Made by a program: the position numbers and the translations under genes | Shown here: positions 40,618 through 47,200 of the stretch, piece by piece | Layout of the letters: every line of letters starts with the position of its first letter | How positions within the stretch are numbered: position 1 is the stretch's first letter | Source: Perkinsus chesapeaki ATCC PRA-425 | Lineage: Eukaryota > Protista > Perkinsozoa | Assembly: GCA_013115145.1 (NCBI GenBank) | Contig: JAAPAO010000140.1 | Coordinates: 619 to 64,618, forward strand | Length of the DNA: 64,000 bases | Direction: 5' to 3' | The notes under the pieces: generated by a model | The model's input: only the letters and a program-made list of their open reading frames with translations | Database searches by the model: none | Told to the model about the DNA's origin: nothing

Positions 40618-41792
40618 ATGCCACGCAAGTCCAAGAAGGCCAAAGACCAGGAGCAAGAACAGGAGCCAGCAGCAGCAGCCGTGGCTGAGGCGGCCTCGGA
40701 CAACAACAAGACGAAGAAGAAGGCGAGAGAGCGTGCAAATGACGTCAAGTTGGAGCCGGACTCGCTCGAACAGCGGAGACGAGAGCTGCAGCGAACAATA
40801 CAGAAAACGGTGGGTCTGCGATGGCGTGATGCATCGGGCGTGATGGTTGGGTGGTGGTAGGTGCGGAAAATGCGGGAAGAGGGAGTTGATGAGGCGCTGA
40901 TTAAGGTGGAGATTAATAGGATTAAGAATAGGGAGCAAAGAACACTTATGCATGCCGTAAGAGGACATTATGAAAATACCGGAGCCGGGGATCGAACCTG
41001 CGTGGTTAGGTCAAACAGCAGCAAAGGGTTGAAAAGGGCAGCAAACACGAAGTCGTTGTGGTACGTGAGGGCGGAGCGAAGCGATTCATCATTAACGGTT
41101 TCATGGTAGATTCCGATTGCATGGAAGCAAAAGGCCAGAGAAAAGGCAGAAGTTGACTCGGCGTCGATCGCCGTGAAGAGGGCCCTCCTGTCAGCTGGAG
41201 TGGACGCATGGCTTGACCATCGAAGAGAGTAAGCAGCCAATGCTATCTCCTCTTGTGGAGACTATCCAGATACACACCCGGTCAGAAGTTTGCCTATTGG
41301 GAGCATCTCGGTGTCAAGTTCCGCGTGGAGATTGGTCCCAATGATGTCGCCCAAAACCAATGCGTGGTGGTCCGAGCTGACGAGCCAGGAGAGTGGCTGA
41401 AGCATCAGAGGAAGCGAGGAGTAAGGTTCTGGTGGTCGCGGCTATTCCACTGTGCATTCAGGTGAGGCTCTCCTGCCGCGGTATCATTTCCGCCTTGATT
41501 GAGCTCGGTTATGATGGCGGCGGTGCTGCTGGTGACATTGACAGACTTGACGATGGCATACTGGAGGGGACAGCCGGCCAGGACGAGGACCACGATGAGG
41601 GAGGAGATGCCCACGAGGAAGTTGATGAAGGTATTTCGCTGCCAACACGCCGCATCCGCTGGGTATTTCATTTCCTTTGTAGATTTGGCCGGCAATGTAG
41701 CGCTCTCATCTGATGCCCCCAAAAGAGAGAAGCGTAAGACACCTTACAAGTCCTTCCTGATGAACAAGAAGAGGCAACGTACGTCAGAGTGA
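40618..41792 (+). CDS. Protein with a stand-alone ProRS-type anticodon-binding domain between charged low-complexity regions
   Basis: Spliced LLSAGVDAWLDHRR|YTPGQKFAYWEHLGVKFRVEIGPNDVAQNQCVVVR matches the class IIa anticodon-binding motif; no synthetase catalytic domain between the neighbouring genes. Confidence 0.75.
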
Positions 41793-41958
41793 AGCCTCCA
41801 TTGTATTCTATAACGTCATCTCTACCAGCGGCCTCCGCTGGGCTTCGATGCTCAACAACAACATCCACGATAGTTCCTCTCGCTGGTGACTCGGCCTTGC
41901 GTTTGGGGAGTAATGATTAGTTTGTATAGTTTTTAATAAACTGTCTGGCTTGGGGTCG

Positions 41959-43962
41959 ATGCAGTCTCAAGACTGCATTGTAAAATCAACACGTCATCTT
42001 AACAGGCTTCTCTCGTCTCTGCGAAGAGAGAAGGGATCGTCAGAGCGAGCACGGTGCCTCATCGATGAGGCTTTTCGGACACAAAAGATTGTCCCCGATT
42101 CGTTCACGTACAGTCAGGCCTTCCTCCTCGGAGCCTACAGCTGTTCTGAAATCGCCCCCATAGTGCGAGCCAAGGTATCATCTCTGAATACAGTTGCAGT
42201 GAACTCTGCGATAGCTTCCTGTGCCCGTATGGGTTGCGAGGCCGAGGCCCGGGAACTGCTGCGATTGAGCGAGTCGAACAGTCTGGCCAATACTCGTACC
42301 TACAACGCTTTCCTCGCAACTGTTACGACCGGCTCGGCAGCTCTGACAGTATGGCGGTCGATCCCAGCTGGGCTGAAAGACGGGTATACTCTGCAACTTG
42401 TCTTGAATCGATTGGCCCAAGATGGTCATCCACCCAAAGACTATCACACTGTGCTTCAAGAGGTCCGTGGTATCATCCCCACCGATCGTCATCATTTGGC
42501 CACGGTCATCTCTGGTTGCATTCGAGGTGGATATCCGCTCGACGGTCTCGAGGCTTTGAAGGCTGCTAACGTGAAAGCCTGCGATGACAAGGTGCTCGCC
42601 ACCTGCGTGCTGTGTGCTTACGAGCGGCTCGGTATGTGGCGTGAAAGCATCGACTTGGTTGGAGCAATCGACGAGCCCGATGCTGTATGCTACACTGTGG
42701 CGATGGCTGTCTGTGCTCGAGCTGGACGAGGCAAGGAGGCCGTCATTCTGTGGGGAGAGATGCGCAATCGTGGTCTCACTCCTCAGCGGCAAAGTCTCTC
42801 CGCAGTGGTGCGCGCATGTGAAGCCGCTGGCGACTACGACAACGCCATACGAATACTAAGTGAGATTGGTGAAGAAGCTCCGAAGGTGGGTGCGGTCACC
42901 GATCCGACCAAAAGATTCGCTAGCAGCCGGCCAGAGAGGATCACTCTTGCCTATCGAGACCTGCTCTGCGATAGGCTTGAACTGTCGCTCAACAGGGGCT
43001 CCGCTGTCTCTCCTTTGGGTGTCGCCGACCATCGCCAAGAGACAGTGCGAGTCGGTGTTGATTTCGGTACCGGACCCGCGCCCCATCAAGATGCGCTTGC
43101 CAAGCTTTTACCATCAACAGAGGAGCGTATGCGCGCCCTTGCGGCTGTCACCGATCTGAAAGGCCTTGCCGAAAAGGTGGGGCTCGGGTGTATAGAGTAC
43201 GGTGCTGCAGCCGCCGGCCTGGCCTTGCCTCATGGTGATGTCGACGTTACTTTGGTGCCGCAGGGGTTTGACTCCTCAACTGCGTGGCTTGAGAGCCTCT
43301 CCGATGCCGACAGGTCGGCCTATCCACCACGGGAATCTGCCCAGGCCTGTTTGCTCTCCCTTTATCGAATGCTCAATGATCGCTCTCCTTTCGGTGTTGT
43401 GGCCACTGGTCTCGGCGGAAGAGTCCCTGTTCTGACAATCCTCCACAAGGCCACTAAAACAGTGATGGATGTCACCTACATAAACGCCCTCGGCTGTCGG
43501 AAGAGCATCTGGCTCTCTGAACAAGTGGCAGAGCTACCTCAACTTAAAGATGCTATCCGCGTGGTAAAGTATTGGATGAAGAGACATGGCATGACAGGCC
43601 AGTCTAGAGGGTGGCTCGGCGGCTATTCTCTCGCGGTGGCAATGGTCGGAGTGGCGAAGGCCATCGACGCCCCCAACGACTGCGAAACCCTCTGTCGAGC
43701 TTTCGTTCGTTTGCTGCGCCAAATGGACATAGAAAGGCATTGCATCAGCCCTCGGCTTGGTGGAGTGGTCCCTAAGGTGTGTGGGAGAGGGCAAAGTTTG
43801 TCCATTGAAGACCCTATTGAAATACAATGGGATTTGGGAGCCATCCTTGGAGAGGAGAGGACGGCGGCACTACTTGGCAAAATTGGACAAGTCGATGCAT
43901 GGTGTGCACGTAACAGTGACTCAAGTTTGACTGAATGGTTGCTGCTTGCTGTTTCTGATTAA
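41959..43962 (+). CDS. PPR-repeat protein fused to a Cid1/GLD-2/TUTase-like nucleotidyltransferase, intronless
   Basis: About 8-9 PPR-like units (e.g. AVCYTVAMAVCARAGRGKEAVILWGEMRNRGLTPQ), then YGAAAAGLALPHGDVDVT, GRVPVL, VMDVTYINALG, VKYWMKRHGM...GWLGGYSL, LSIEDP. Confidence 0.9.
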   Translation: MQSQDCIVKSTRHLNRLLSSLRREKGSSERARCLIDEAFRTQKIVPDSFTYSQAFLLGAYSCSEIAPIVRAKVSSLNTVAVNSAIASCARMGCEAEARELLRLSESNSLANTRTYNAFLATVTTGSAALTVWRSIPAGLKDGYTLQLVLNRLAQDGHPPKDYHTVLQEVRGIIPTDRHHLATVISGCIRGGYPLDGLEALKAANVKACDDKVLATCVLCAYERLGMWRESIDLVGAIDEPDAVCYTVAMAVCARAGRGKEAVILWGEMRNRGLTPQRQSLSAVVRACEAAGDYDNAIRILSEIGEEAPKVGAVTDPTKRFASSRPERITLAYRDLLCDRLELSLNRGSAVSPLGVADHRQETVRVGVDFGTGPAPHQDALAKLLPSTEERMRALAAVTDLKGLAEKVGLGCIEYGAAAAGLALPHGDVDVTLVPQGFDSSTAWLESLSDADRSAYPPRESAQACLLSLYRMLNDRSPFGVVATGLGGRVPVLTILHKATKTVMDVTYINALGCRKSIWLSEQVAELPQLKDAIRVVKYWMKRHGMTGQSRGWLGGYSLAVAMVGVAKAIDAPNDCETLCRAFVRLLRQMDIERHCISPRLGGVVPKVCGRGQSLSIEDPIEIQWDLGAILGEERTAALLGKIGQVDAWCARNSDSSLTEWLLLAVSD

Positions 43963-44280: not shown

Positions 44281-47200
44281 TCAATCACAGTCGATGATCT
44301 CAATGTCTTCGCTGGATGGCGGATCATAATCCGACAGCGACACTGAATCGACTACATCACCAACAAGCATTTCGCTCGAGGACAACGAGACGCCATCCTC
44401 GATAGCATCCACGTCGGTGAACGGATAGTCGCCGCTCGACGGCAAATCAAGGTCCTCTTCCAGGCATGGCTGCGCAAGGGGAATCTCGTCCTGTGTGTGA
44501 TCACTAATAATCTCGGCTTCGGACGACTGACTGCTCTGTAGCTCTGTTTTACCGCTGGAGGCCTTCCGCCCACTCAGCTGACTCGGCGCGACTTCCCACG
44601 TTCCAGGGAGACGATTGTCAAGCTGACCCAGATTCCGCCGAGCCCTGAGCTCTTCGATAGGTGCATCGCATCGCACGAAGTAGTTATCACAATGGTAAGC
44701 ATCCGTGCAACCTGCAGCCATCACAACAGAGCCTTCTGTGCAACTCGTACAGATCAGCCTAGCTGCACGAGATCTTGCCTCGGCCCCTCGTGCTGCGCTA
44801 CTCCCAGCGAACGCCACCAGAGCCGGATCGCGGTCCAAGCATGTTTCGCAAACCCAACGAGTGCCTTGTCGACTGCCCAATCGATGATGGCATAGGAAGC
44901 ACTCTGAACTCATGCTTTCTACAGCTGGCAGATCTTCGGTTAACCAAGCGGCCACACTCGGGAGGATCGGTGCGAGGATGCGCTGGACCGCCGGGAAGAA
45001 CTGCTTCGTCAAGTAGTAGTCAGCATCGATAACAACATTCCTCGACCCAGCGATCCTGTACGGCGGTACCACTCTGTCCAGGAGCTTAGCGTTCGACCTG
45101 TCACCAGCTTTTCTTGCCACCACATAAGCCACACGTTCCTTGTAACCGGTGTCCAGTCCTTGTAGGGCGGCTACATGGGCCGCTGGAGGGAGATTCTTAC
45201 TGCGATAATTAAGCCGTACTTGGTTTTGAAATATGAATTCAGTTTTGCTAATCTCACCGCTATAAAGCCGTCTGATGATCTCGCGCCCGGCTCGTCGGCC
45301 AGCCTCCAGATGAAGCGTCTCGTCTGCCGTAGGGTCCGTTCGGAACATAGCCTCGAGCACACTGTGCACAGACTTTGCCGTGAAGGGGCAGCTGTCTCGC
45401 CGGACTGTCTCGATGCCCTTGGCGAAGAACTCTGGTTTAGCTTTAGGATGCTCATATGCCCAACCGCAATATCTTTTCTTTGACACCAAAATACATGGCA
45501 TGCAGACTTTCTCAAGTTGCAGTTTGATCGGCCATGGGTTAACACTCGTCACACAGTCCGCCAATCTGCCTCCAAACTCGAACGCAGCTTCCACAGACCC
45601 GCATGATTCACTCGGCGGCCTGCACCATGAGCTGTAATAAAAGACCGCAACGCTGTTGCTGTGAAACTCACCGTATGAACATAGAATCGGTGTCCCCATA
45701 CAAAACTGTGGCGCCCATGTCCTCAGCAATCGACATGGCCTGCTGCAAAGTCCGCCTGGCTGTCAAAACAATAGCATCAGCTAGCTCCGAGCATGGCATG
45801 CGGCCAGAGAATGACGCACCAGCGTAGCCATACCTGAACTCTATGTGAGGAAATGATCAACTATGTGCAGCATCGCTACGTCACGTTAGCCAGCAACTTA
45901 AGCCCGAGTTGCCGGGCATCCATAATTCTATATAGTGCGGGAGAATCTTTTGAATTCACGCGTTTCATTGCACGCTTGACCATAAACCTTGTCTGGAGGA
46001 CCTGTGAGATACCATTCGACGAAGACCAAAAGATCCAGTCGACGAACCTCGTGGAGCATCCGGGGCAAGATGCCAACTCTACATGACGGCTGCACGAATA
46101 CCACTCCATTCGCAGCAACAACAACATTATCATCCTGGAGAATCGATGACGATCGTTTAATCTACAAACAACAAATATGTCATTCAACGATCCTACGTAG
46201 TAGTCGAAAGTTACCGTATGAGGTTTATCTCGCTGCGTGCCCAGTGGTACTGTCACATCCAGGTGTTCAACACGCCCCAGACATGTTGAGTAGCACATAT
46301 TATAGGCAATTATAATGCTTGGATATAGACTCTGGAAGTCTAGAATTATAGTAGGCGTTCGGTAATAGCCAGATCTTGGCTCAAGGATCATAGGAGTTCC
46401 CTCCAACGCCGGTTGTGCTTTCACCTAAGCAAGTAGGCCTAAACACAGTTACCAGCCTAGGTCCCCTAGCTCCAGTTGCGCATTCGAAAACAATCAGTTG
46501 TTCGCGGGGCTCACCTGCGCTTTGGATGATGTGACTAAGGCGAAACCGCTCCTAGTTGCCGCGCGATGGAGAATGCACTCAACTCTATATTGGCTTCCTC
46601 GAGTCAGCACCTGAGTAGAAGATTCCTGCTCGGAAGATTGACGAACTCTACAACAGAGTTCACGAACGCCCCCTAAATTAAACGAAATAAATAATTACCT
46701 CCTCGACATCCGGCATTCCTAATACGGATGACATCTCAGATGCTCGACTGAGAAGAGTACTGGCATCCAGCAGCTGCAAAGCGAGGAGGACCATCCGTGA
46801 GGTATATTTAAAGGCTTTGAGGCACAATGCTCTATCAGTCCACCAATCCTGCAGCAACCACATCGGGATATTCGGCAGCGTCAATCCGAGCAGCTGCCTT
46901 GCTGCACCATGCAAAGTCGTTGTTGACAACTTGAGCGAATCCTCCTGCCGCAAAGTCTGCCAAAGATCAAGCGTTATGCGGCCGAATAGGGTAGACGCTC
47001 CCATAGGCCCTGGAACAGGCGCGATGCAGACTCGATGGAATAGATACTCCGAGTTTGGAACGCGGAGGGATCGGGCCCGCTCAGCCGCATACACGATACC
47101 CTTCCGAGAGGCATCCCAGCTAACCACTACTGTGGGATCGAATTGACCAAAGACGTGGTCGAGGGCGAGGATGAGCTCGGACTCACAGGAAGCGTGTTGC

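What the first reader, a model, noticed from the sequence alone, without database searches (positions are those of the whole stretch)
41959..43962. PPR array fused to a terminal nucleotidyltransferase: candidate sequence-guided organellar RNA-tailing enzyme
Seen: one intronless ORF with about 8-9 PPR-like repeats followed by a complete Pol-beta-type domain with all three acidic residues (GDVDV, VMDVT) and a PAP-associated region. The GS motif is GA, and the nucleotide-recognition loop is IEDPIEIQWDLG where Cid1 has IEDPFEISHNVG (His selects UTP). N-terminus is Arg/Ser/Leu-rich. Known: PPRs read RNA base by base, mostly in organelles; trypanosome mitochondrial KPAP1 needs separate PPR cofactors; myzozoan mitochondrial mRNAs and rRNA fragments are oligoadenylated and dinoflagellate plastid RNAs are polyuridylated. 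Inference: a single-chain, self-targeting tailing enzyme that could be the mitochondrial oligo(A) polymerase of this lineage, with unpredictable NTP preference. I cannot verify novelty without a search.
Basis: partly seen in the sequence, partly recalled or inferred. Interest (0 to 1): 0.8.

Follow-up and report, generated by a model that had tools for sequence, protein, structure and literature searches.

The report
PPR-fused RNA-tailing enzyme of Perkinsus
A shellfish parasite (Perkinsus) has one gene that joins an RNA-gripping repeat array to an RNA tail-adding enzyme; dinoflagellates have it too, no paper I searched describes it, and it is a good candidate for the enzyme that adds short A-tails to this lineage's mitochondrial RNAs.

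Summary
Window 41959-43962 (+) is an intact, intronless 667-codon ORF. AlphaFold models nine PPR-type helical hairpins at residues 11-301; three to five of them are recognisable as PPR by sequence. Residues 377-663 form a complete Cid1/GLD2/TUT/mtPAP-type terminal nucleotidyltransferase (VIA-align Z 22-27 to solved structures). All three catalytic Asp are present, along with the triphosphate lysines and the stacking Tyr.

The genome is a Perkinsus species other than P. olseni or P. marinus. Both of those carry syntenic, intact orthologues at about 62% identity.

The same PPR-NTase fusion occurs in core dinoflagellates (Cladocopium, Prorocentrum/Polarella, Gymnodinium and transcriptomes) as two subgroups, so it predates the Perkinsus-dinoflagellate split. 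In one dinoflagellate subgroup the RNA-specifying PPR positions are far better conserved than the rest of the array. That points to a conserved RNA ligand.

The UTP-selecting His of Cid1/TUT7 is a Trp here, and the GS motif is GA in Perkinsus only.

My best reading is a mitochondrial oligo/poly(A)-adding enzyme with a built-in PPR RNA-binding module. Localisation, nucleotide choice and expression in this species were not shown.

No paper in the searched library describes the fusion. Toxoplasma TgmtPAP1 is the nearest characterised enzyme, but I could not test orthology. The scan noted this same stretch once before, in another window.

The parts
41959..43962 (+). Intronless ORF, 667 codons plus stop: the PPR-NTase fusion protein
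   Evidence: ORF listing. Intact colinear ORFs in P. olseni (L001 10001-12034, 677 aa) and a P. marinus-like assembly (L002 4001-6058, 685 aa). Start ATG conserved in the three-species alignment.
41989..42861 (+). PPR-type alpha-solenoid, residues 11-301: 18 helices, 9 hairpins
   Evidence: AlphaFold2 model, block pLDDT mostly 75-94. Foldseek matches to designed PPR proteins. PPR10 alignment over residues 137-305.
42190..42294 (+). Recognisable PPR repeat, residues 78-112 (position 5 = Asn)
   Evidence: In-session PPR repeat HMM, iE 2e-7; code positions.
42682..42891 (+). Two best PPR repeats, residues 242-276 and 277-311
   Evidence: Pfam PPR E 1e-11 and PPR_2 E 2.5e-10. NCBIfam TIGR00756 E 1.9e-10. 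Repeat HMM iE 1e-12 and 3e-6.
42862..43086 (+). Low-confidence linker, residues 302-376, the least conserved part (about 45% identity among Perkinsus species)
   Evidence: pLDDT below 50 at residues 308-325 and 345-360; identity by region.
42916..42990 (+). Conserved motif FASSRPE (residues 320-326) and helix ITLAYRDLLCDRLE (328-341), shared with dinoflagellate subgroup A
   Evidence: Alignment A1 columns 660-745; R339, L340 and E341 nearly invariant. Helix 330-344 in the model.
43087..43533 (+). NTase catalytic (palm) domain, residues 377-525
   Evidence: PF22600 at residues 410-516; profile and fold matches to TUT7, URT1, GLD2, Cid1 and mtPAP.
43198..43251 (+). YGAAAAG...GDVDV: the G[S->A] loop and the first two catalytic Asp (D427, D429)
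   Evidence: Motif positions. G415, D427 and D429 invariant in 11 sequences. Dinoflagellate members read YGS.
43462..43476 (+). VMDVT: third catalytic Asp (D504)
   Evidence: Invariant column D504; aligns to TUT7 EVDIS.
43534..43947 (+). Central / PAP-associated domain, residues 526-663, with K537, K541 and Y556
   Evidence: PAP_central at residues 530-567. PAP_assoc hits at the aligned region in the homologues. Structural alignment runs to the C-terminus.
43801..43839 (+). Nucleotide-recognition motif SIEDPIEIQWDLG, residues 615-627. Trp sits where Cid1/TUT7 have the UTP-selecting His.
   Evidence: Motif position. E617, D618, E621, D625 and L626 nearly invariant. Alignment to TUT7 IEDPFDLNHNLG.
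41793..41958 (+). Spacer between the stop of the upstream gene (41790-41792) and the start ATG. Indel-rich, with two short conserved blocks.
   Evidence: Sequence; three-species alignment A4.

Best explanation
**What it is.** The gene encodes a single polypeptide. An N-terminal PPR-type solenoid of nine hairpins holds single-stranded organellar RNA. A C-terminal Cid1/GLD2/mtPAP-type terminal nucleotidyltransferase adds untemplated nucleotides to the RNA's 3' hydroxyl by two-metal catalysis (D427, D429, D504).

**Most likely role.** It is imported into the mitochondrion. There it adds the short A-tails found on Perkinsus cob and cox1 mRNAs and, by analogy with Toxoplasma, on fragmented rRNAs.

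**Why the fusion matters.** It puts in one chain what human mitochondria (LRPPRC/SLIRP with MTPAP) and trypanosomes (KPAF PPR proteins with KPAP1) do with separate proteins.

**Shown:** the architecture, an intact catalytic centre, the fold, and conservation of the fusion across Perkinsus and dinoflagellates.

**Inferred:** RNA binding by the PPR tract, mitochondrial location, ATP as the preferred substrate, and the identity of the target RNAs.
For: **Architecture and fold**
- PPR hits lie above the Pfam cut-offs.
- The model shows a 9-hairpin solenoid.
- The NTase family profile hits TUT7, URT1, GLD2, Cid1 and mtPAP at E 1e-47 to 1e-20.
- Structural Z is 22-27 over about 275 residues.

**Active site**
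- D427, D429, D504, K515, S516 and K537 are invariant in 11 sequences.
- Y556 and K541 are present.

**Constraint on both halves**
- Identity to P. olseni is 64.8% in the PPR tract, 62.8% in the NTase and 46.5% in the linker.
- 15 of 16 aligned PPR code positions are identical among the three Perkinsus species.

**Age of the fusion**
- Syntenic orthologues exist in P. olseni and P. marinus.
- The same fusion, with canonical PPRs, PF22600 and PAP_assoc, occurs in Cladocopium, Gymnodinium smaydae, Prorocentrum/Polarella and in transcriptome assemblies.

**Sequence-directed binding in relatives**
- In dinoflagellate subgroup A, code positions are 70% identical in register, against 36% out of register and 38% for the tract. 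0 of 5000 random column sets reached the observed value.

**A substrate exists**
- A mitochondrial PAP is essential for rRNA A-tails in Toxoplasma (PMC11742926).

**No His at the UTP-selecting position**
- It is Trp in Perkinsus and subgroup A, and V, K or I in subgroup B. From my own knowledge of Cid1 H336 and the GLD2 His-insertion work, this argues against a Cid1-style uridylyltransferase.

**Trans precedent**
- LRPPRC/SLIRP promotes MTPAP polyadenylation (PMC3439899).
Against: - No localisation data. Only about 10 residues precede the first helix, so no obvious cleavable presequence is present.
- No RNA evidence for this species. The only holders of the stretch are DNA runs.
- The Ser of the hG[GS] motif is Ala in all three Perkinsus species, which might lower activity.
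- By profile score the closest solved relatives are uridylyltransferases (TUT7, TUT4, URT1), not mtPAP.
- Myzozoan mitochondria tail many different RNAs. That fits poorly with one fixed sequence-specific array.
- The Perkinsus PPR code does not match subgroup A (33% against 31% background), and most Perkinsus repeats are degenerate.
- The P. marinus 'homologue of TgmtPAP1' mentioned in PMC13623125 may be a different gene.
Confidence: 0.5

Rival explanations
1. It is a mitochondrial tailing enzyme, but it adds U or mixed tails (a TUTase or mixed tailer). Such tails would mark RNAs for decay or processing rather than build the stabilising or structural A-tails.
For: The best profile and structure matches are TUT7, TUT4 and URT1. 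The Trp at the nucleotide-recognition position has no characterised counterpart, so specificity cannot be read from sequence.
Against: The His that selects UTP in Cid1, TUT7 and URT1 is absent. The tails reported on Perkinsus mitochondrial mRNAs are poly(A) (PMC9550989). Structural Z-scores for PAPs (GLD2 25.6, mtPAP 23.5) and TUTases (24-27) are close to tied.
Confidence: 0.15
2. It is not mitochondrial. It is a cytosolic or nuclear non-canonical poly(A)/(U) polymerase (of TRAMP, Cid1 or GLD2 type) that happens to use a PPR-like solenoid as its RNA- or protein-binding module.
For: There is no evident presequence. The NTase belongs to the broad Cid1 family, whose members are mostly nucleo-cytoplasmic. 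Most Perkinsus repeats are degenerate.
Against: PPR proteins are overwhelmingly organellar (established knowledge; review PMC12787238). The N-terminal helix STRHLNRLLSSLRREKG is basic and could serve as an import signal. Dinoflagellate homologues carry canonical P-class arrays typical of organellar factors.
Confidence: 0.12
3. It is a catalytically weakened scaffold. The GS-to-GA change has turned the Perkinsus copy into an RNA-binding pseudo-enzyme that recruits or regulates another polymerase.
For: All three Perkinsus species read YGA where the dinoflagellates read YGS. The single-sequence Pfam NTase score is below the gathering threshold.
Against: All three catalytic Asp, both Lys, the Tyr and the ED..E..DLG recognition motif are retained over a long divergence. 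The NTase half is as conserved as the PPR half. Ala is a small residue compatible with the loop (inference).
Confidence: 0.08
4. The gene model is longer. The upstream HGTP_anticodon-domain gene is spliced onto this ORF, giving a three-module protein, as annotated in two P. olseni isolates.
For: P0165 (967 aa) and P0003 are annotated as such fusions. An in-frame GT...AG path also exists in the window (my reading).
Against: The two P. olseni models use different acceptors. A third isolate is annotated as two genes. The upstream stop and its last codons are kept in three species with in-frame codon indels (QRTSE*, QRTE*, QRTAE*) and are followed by an indel-rich spacer. This rival concerns the gene model only and could hold together with any of the functional readings.
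Confidence: 0.1

Closest known systems
Toxoplasma gondii TgmtPAP1 (TGGT1_281370), mitochondrial poly(A) polymerase (PMC11742926)
   Same: It is a myzozoan MTPAP-like non-canonical NTase. It is mitochondrial, essential, and needed for full-length A-tails on fragmented rRNAs. That is the function proposed here.
   Different: It was found by BLAST with human MTPAP, and no PPR array is mentioned in the paper or its supplement. I could not obtain its sequence, so orthology is untested. The window protein on its own does not reach MTPAP in a PDB phmmer search.
Human/chicken MTPAP working with LRPPRC/SLIRP
   Same: The NTase fold is the same (Z 23.5 to chicken mtPAP). A PPR protein promotes mitochondrial polyadenylation (PMC3439899).
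   Different: The PPR protein is a separate polypeptide. MTPAP carries an N-terminal RL dimerisation domain instead of PPRs. The family profile scores lower against mtPAP (E 3e-25 and 1.5e-20) than against TUT7 or URT1.
Trypanosome KPAP1 with the PPR factors KPAF1/2, KPAF3 and KPAF4 (my own knowledge)
   Same: A mitochondrial Cid1-family poly(A) polymerase whose substrate choice and tail type are set by PPR proteins.
   Different: The PPR factors act in trans, as several distinct proteins. Here one array is covalently fused to the enzyme.
Cid1 / TUT4 / TUT7 / URT1 terminal uridylyltransferases
   Same: These are the closest solved relatives by profile (E 4.8e-47 to 7e-27) and by fold (Z 23-27). 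They share the DxD...D centre, the lysines, the Tyr and the IEDP...LG recognition motif.
   Different: The UTP-selecting His is Trp here. There are no zinc knuckles. The N-terminal module is a PPR array. The GS motif is GA in Perkinsus.
Other PPR-enzyme fusions: PRORP (PPR-NYN), PPR-SMR, PPR-DYW, PPR-TGM
   Same: The design principle is the same: a P-class PPR array followed by a C-terminal catalytic domain acting on organellar RNA. A PPR-TGM is known in P. marinus (PMC4029402).
   Different: The catalytic domain is a terminal nucleotidyltransferase. That combination is not among the subgroups listed in the 2026 review of dinoflagellate RNA-binding proteins (PMC12787238).

Membership tests
Pol-beta-superfamily non-canonical terminal NTase (Cid1/GLD2/TUT/mtPAP family) | Catalytic triad Dx[DE] plus a third Asp on the palm sheet | tested here: met
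   GDVDV (D427, D429) and VMDVT (D504). These columns are invariant in 11 family members and align to the TUT7 catalytic Asp.
Pol-beta-superfamily non-canonical terminal NTase (Cid1/GLD2/TUT/mtPAP family) | hG[GS] helical-turn motif upstream of DxD | tested here: inconclusive
   Perkinsus reads YGA in three species; dinoflagellate members read YGS. The Gly is invariant and the Ser is replaced by Ala. The effect on activity is unknown.
Pol-beta-superfamily non-canonical terminal NTase (Cid1/GLD2/TUT/mtPAP family) | Two-domain fold: palm plus central/PAP-associated domain | tested here: met
   NTase-only model pLDDT 85.6, pTM 0.86. Z 27.0 to URT1, 25.6 to GLD2, 24.1 to TUT7, 23.5 to mtPAP over about 275 residues at 2.7-2.8 A.
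Pol-beta-superfamily non-canonical terminal NTase (Cid1/GLD2/TUT/mtPAP family) | Sequence-profile membership | tested here: met
   The family profile A2 hits TUT7 at 4.8e-47, URT1 at 3e-42, GLD2 at 4e-27, Cid1 at 7e-27 and mtPAP at 3e-25. The single sequence is below the Pfam cut-off (23.5 against 27 bits).
UTP-selective TUTase (Cid1/TUT7 mechanism) | His in the nucleotide-recognition motif that reads uracil | tested here: not met
   IEIQWDLG aligns to TUT7 FDLNHNLG, so Trp replaces His. Subgroup B has V, K or I at this position.
Pentatricopeptide repeat (PPR) protein, P class | Tandem repeats of about 35 aa matching PPR models above threshold | tested here: met
   PF01535 44.7 bits (cut-off 25), PF13041 40.7 bits (cut-off 30), TIGR00756 40.2 bits (cut-off 20). 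Only 3 repeats are significant with the in-session HMM.
Pentatricopeptide repeat (PPR) protein, P class | Right-handed solenoid of helix-hairpin units | tested here: met
   18 helices forming 9 hairpins at residues 11-301 with pLDDT mostly 75-94. Foldseek matches to designed PPRs at E 1e-9 to 1e-8.
Pentatricopeptide repeat (PPR) protein, P class | Canonical code residues at positions 5 and 35 that allow target prediction | tested here: inconclusive
   The Perkinsus pairs are ND, SN, ND, QD, AD, TD, TQ, S?. Only some are canonical. Dinoflagellate subgroup A has canonical, conserved pairs.
Mitochondrial poly(A) polymerase (functional class; TgmtPAP1 orthologue) | Mitochondrial localisation | not testable with these tools
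   No targeting predictor or proteome table was available. The N-terminus is short and basic. The supplement of PMC13623125 is not held.
Mitochondrial poly(A) polymerase (functional class; TgmtPAP1 orthologue) | Reciprocal-best-hit orthology with TGGT1_281370 | not tested
   No tool returned the Toxoplasma sequence.
Mitochondrial poly(A) polymerase (functional class; TgmtPAP1 orthologue) | ATP-specific tailing of mitochondrial RNAs | not testable with these tools
   This needs biochemistry or knockdown with 3'-end sequencing.

The most novel reading that the evidence does not exclude
The PPR-NTase fusion is the long-sought mitochondrial oligo(A) polymerase of Dinozoa, and its built-in PPR array sets where tails are added. 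It may also set how long they are, acting as a tethered ruler for the short, defined A-tails typical of myzozoan mitochondria. The second dinoflagellate subgroup (B), which has a different recognition loop, may be a paralogue specialised for another tailing job, for example plastid poly(U). This would be the first natural single-chain enzyme in which a programmable PPR array directs RNA 3' tailing.
Probability: 0.25. Interest if true: 0.85.

Novelty: new variant of a known kind. Interest (0 to 1): 0.66.

Why it matters
- **An unassigned activity.** In the papers I searched, no Perkinsus or dinoflagellate gene is characterised as the enzyme that puts A-tails on mitochondrial RNAs. Those tails create stop codons or poly-Lys ends on mRNAs and, in Toxoplasma, hold together a ribosome built from dozens of rRNA pieces. 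This gene is a concrete candidate. It can be tested in P. marinus, which is genetically tractable.
- **Convergent logic.** The fusion shows that 'a PPR protein steers a mitochondrial poly(A) polymerase' is a recurring solution. Humans and trypanosomes do it with separate proteins; this lineage hard-wired it into one chain.
- **Engineering template.** PPR arrays are programmable, so a natural PPR-tailing enzyme is also a template for designer RNA 3'-modifying tools.

Tried and rejected
**Searches that reached only Perkinsus or one dinoflagellate**
- Word-indexed homology searches with the full protein, with the NTase region, and with an NTase-domain alignment. They did not reach apicomplexans, so orthology with TgmtPAP1 stays open.

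**ESM Atlas**
- Feature searches with the whole protein and with P0015 gave no usable hit.
- The NTase-only feature search and fold search returned generic MTPAP-like clusters, none with PPR.

**RNA evidence**
- The only runs holding the stretch are DNA and are probably its source. Two small runs guessed to be RNA hold nothing. Expression in this species is therefore not shown. This is not evidence of silence.

**Literature**
- No paper in the library links PPR with a poly(A) polymerase or uridylyltransferase fusion in dinoflagellates or Perkinsus.
- No paper cites the P. marinus accession.
- A search for the bare number 281370 returned only noise.
- The supplement of the P. marinus complexome paper is not held.

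**Readings considered and rejected**
- A plastid role in Perkinsus. From my own knowledge Perkinsus has no plastid genome; I did not test this here.
- A three-module gene including the upstream HGTP_anticodon protein. The upstream stop is conserved with in-frame codon indels.

**Not attempted**
- dN/dS. At about 63% amino-acid identity, synonymous sites are saturated.
- A rooted tree with known NTases as outgroups.
Full report

Yes. The window holds one uninterrupted ORF on the + strand. It runs from a TTG at 41950, or the first ATG at 41959, to the stop at 43960-43962, giving 667 aa from the ATG.

The PPR part:
- Pfam PPR scores 44.7 bits (cut-off 25) and PPR_2 scores 40.7 bits (cut-off 30) at residues 240-287. 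NCBIfam TIGR00756 agrees.
- Against solved structures, residues 137-305 align to maize PPR10 (E 9e-17) and to designer PPRs.
- An AlphaFold2 model built on an 11-sequence family alignment has mean pLDDT 80.7. It places 18 helices, nine hairpins, between residues 11 and 301.
- A PPR repeat HMM built here recognises only three repeats at iE<0.01 and five at iE<=10.

The C-terminal half:
- As a single sequence it is only weakly recognised: PF22600 E 6e-5, below the gathering score.
- A profile of the family hits TUT7 (4.8e-47), TUT4, URT1 (3e-42), CutA, GLD2 (4e-27), Cid1 (7e-27), chicken mtPAP (3e-25) and human MTPAP (1.5e-20).
- A model of residues 327-667 (pLDDT 85.6, pTM 0.86) superposes on URT1, GLD2, CutA, TUT7, TUT1, Cid1 and mtPAP. 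Z is 22-27 over about 275 residues at 2.7-2.8 A.

**2. Gene model and organism**

The best hits are Perkinsus olseni (63% identity, 97% coverage) and P. marinus (60%). The window is therefore a Perkinsus species other than those two. Another note of this scan names the genome P. chesapeaki; I did not check that.

Synteny is conserved in P. olseni and in a P. marinus-like assembly. In P. olseni the order is glutaredoxins, RING-finger gene, HGTP_anticodon gene, PPR-NTase, then a family-B DNA polymerase on the opposite strand; the shorter P. marinus-like contig shows the RING-finger gene, the PPR-NTase and the DNA polymerase.

Both other species have an intact, intronless ORF:
- L001 10001-12034, 677 aa. 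The 3' intron in the deposited model is an artefact.
- L002 4001-6058, 685 aa. The RefSeq P. marinus model diverges after VMD and is wrong there.

Two P. olseni annotations splice the upstream HGTP_anticodon gene onto this ORF. The three-species DNA alignment argues against that. The upstream stop and its last codons (QRTSE*, QRTE*, QRTAE*) are kept with in-frame codon indels and are followed by an indel-rich spacer. The ATG at 41959 aligns with an ATG in both other species. I therefore take 41959-43962 as the gene.

No RNA data exist here for this species. All runs holding the stretch are DNA, and two small runs guessed to be RNA hold nothing.

**3. The fusion is a family, not a one-off**

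An exhaustive HMMER search of 1.84 billion representatives gave eight proteins whose single aligned stretch spans both the PPR and the NTase parts. Their sources are:
- Cladocopium sp.
- Gymnodinium smaydae
- Prorocentrum cordatum / Polarella glacialis: six consecutive accessions on one 261-kb contig, which looks like a tandem array
- a GEMP01 transcriptome
- unnamed Logan and JGI assemblies

All carry strong canonical PPR hits. Most also carry PF22600 and PAP_assoc; all have at least one NTase-domain hit.

In the alignment, G415, D427, D429, D504, K515, S516, K537, W539 and G547 are invariant. The ED..E..DL recognition motif is nearly invariant.

A tree of the NTase domain shows three well-separated groups:
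- Perkinsus (100/100 support)
- a dinoflagellate subgroup B (100/100 support)
- a poorly resolved subgroup A

Perkinsus shares the linker motif F[AR]S[SA]RP..[IV]T...R.....RLE and the IEDP.E..WDLG loop with subgroup A. Subgroup B has IEDCVE..[VKI]DL. The fusion therefore predates the Perkinsus-dinoflagellate split. Several homologues come from transcriptome assemblies (TSA, Trinity), so the family is expressed in dinoflagellates.

**4. What the PPR array says**

I extracted PPR positions 5 and 35, the residues that read the base under the established code (Barkan 2012, Yin 2013, Shen 2016; my own knowledge).

Dinoflagellate subgroup A:
- The eight aligned repeats read roughly [T/S/A]D, ND, ND, SD, SD, GD, NT, N?. 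That is about G-U-U-G-G-(G)-C-(U).
- These positions are 70% identical between members. This compares with 38% for the whole tract and 36% when repeats are compared out of register.
- 0 of 5000 random column sets reached the observed value.
- That is the signature of a conserved RNA ligand, and it supports sequence-directed binding in that subgroup.

Perkinsus:
- The pairs are ND, SN, ND, QD, AD, TD, TQ, S?.
- They do not match subgroup A (33% against 31% background).
- They are identical at 15 of 16 positions among the three Perkinsus species, against about 65% identity for the tract. My rough binomial estimate is p about 0.01.
- So the Perkinsus array is constrained, but its target cannot be read from the canonical code.

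**5. What the catalytic domain says**

The residues known from Cid1-family structures (my own knowledge of those structures) are all present:
- three metal-binding Asp
- two Lys on the helix that binds the triphosphate (K537, K541)
- the Tyr that stacks on the base (Y556)
- the recognition motif

Two departures:
- The Ser of hG[GS] is Ala in all three Perkinsus species, while the dinoflagellates keep Ser.
- The His that selects UTP in Cid1 and TUT7 is Trp. One search aligns IEIQWDLG with TUT7 FDLNHNLG.

Lacking that His argues against a Cid1-style uridylyltransferase and is compatible with A addition. No characterised enzyme has Trp there, so nucleotide choice remains an inference. Structural Z-scores do not discriminate between PAP and TUTase relatives.

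**6. Most likely function**

- In Toxoplasma, A-tails on fragmented rRNAs are structural parts of the mitoribosome and depend on the mitochondrial polymerase TgmtPAP1 (PMC11742926).
- PPR proteins are overwhelmingly organellar. From my own knowledge, Perkinsus has no plastid genome.
- In humans, LRPPRC/SLIRP stimulates MTPAP (PMC3439899). In trypanosomes, KPAF PPR proteins steer KPAP1 (my own knowledge).

The most economical reading is a mitochondrial RNA 3'-adenylating enzyme with its PPR partner fused in cis (confidence about 0.5). The rivals are:
- a U or mixed tailer (0.15)
- a non-mitochondrial non-canonical polymerase (0.12)
- a weakened pseudo-enzyme (0.08)
- a longer gene model that includes the upstream gene (0.1). 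This concerns the gene model only and could hold together with any of the functional readings.

**7. Novelty**

Databases auto-label the orthologues 'PPR-containing protein' or 'MTPAP-like central palm domain-containing protein'.

I found no paper describing a PPR-NTase fusion:
- A January 2026 review of dinoflagellate RNA-binding proteins lists PPR-SMR, PRORP, PPR-TGM and DYW types. It says other P-class subfamilies remain to be proven, and it contains neither 'nucleotidyltransferase' nor 'PAP'.
- Other searches were blank.

The 2026 P. marinus complexome paper mentions 'a homolog of TgmtPAP1' without an identifier in the held text. That homologue may or may not be this gene. I could not obtain the Toxoplasma sequence, so orthology is open.

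I rate the finding a new variant of a known kind: a known enzyme family and a known RNA-binding module in an undescribed, ancient and conserved combination. It bears on the still-unassigned tailing activity of dinozoan mitochondria.

Noticed in passing
window 40618-41792 (+): The upstream same-strand gene starts MPRKSKK... and ends KRKTPYKSFLMNKKRQRTSE*. It is a small stand-alone HGTP_anticodon-domain protein (aaRS anticodon-binding fold), identified by synteny with P. olseni L001 8532-9851. Two P. olseni annotations fuse it in frame to the PPR-NTase using different acceptors. The conserved stop argues they are separate genes.
   Followed up: partly
window about 41800-41815 and 41868-41882: Two short blocks in the otherwise indel-rich spacer are conserved in three Perkinsus species: TTGTATYCTAYAAC and ATAGTTYCTC. 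They may be 3'-end or trans-splicing signals.
   Followed up: no
window 44281-46424 and beyond (-): A multi-exon family-B DNA polymerase with a Cys-rich C-terminal module lies tail-to-tail with the PPR-NTase. The arrangement is conserved in P. olseni and P. marinus (Pfam DNA_pol_B in L001 and L002).
   Followed up: no
L002 4001-6058; P0002 (XP_002775279): The P. marinus RefSeq model is mis-predicted after the VMD motif and loses the third-Asp strand and the whole central domain. A Logan assembly carries the intact 685-aa ORF.
   Followed up: yes
L001 10001-12034: The deposited P. olseni model (P0001) has a spurious 3' intron. The uninterrupted ORF of 677 aa ends ...SELSLVDRLIVSG, like the P. 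marinus sequence.
   Followed up: yes
P0038, P0076, P0125 (dinoflagellate subgroup B): A second PPR-NTase paralogue group in dinoflagellates has 10-14 significant PPR repeats (iE<0.01), an extra helical insert before the NTase, and a different recognition loop (IEDCVE..[V/K/I]DL). I saw no Perkinsus member among the hits I could inspect. It may serve another tailing pathway.
   Followed up: partly
P0057, P0157-P0161 (Prorocentrum cordatum CAK0869035-40): Six consecutive accessions of the fusion lie on one 261-kb contig. This looks like a tandem gene array, as is typical of dinoflagellates.
   Followed up: no
The whole block is syntenic.
   Followed up: no
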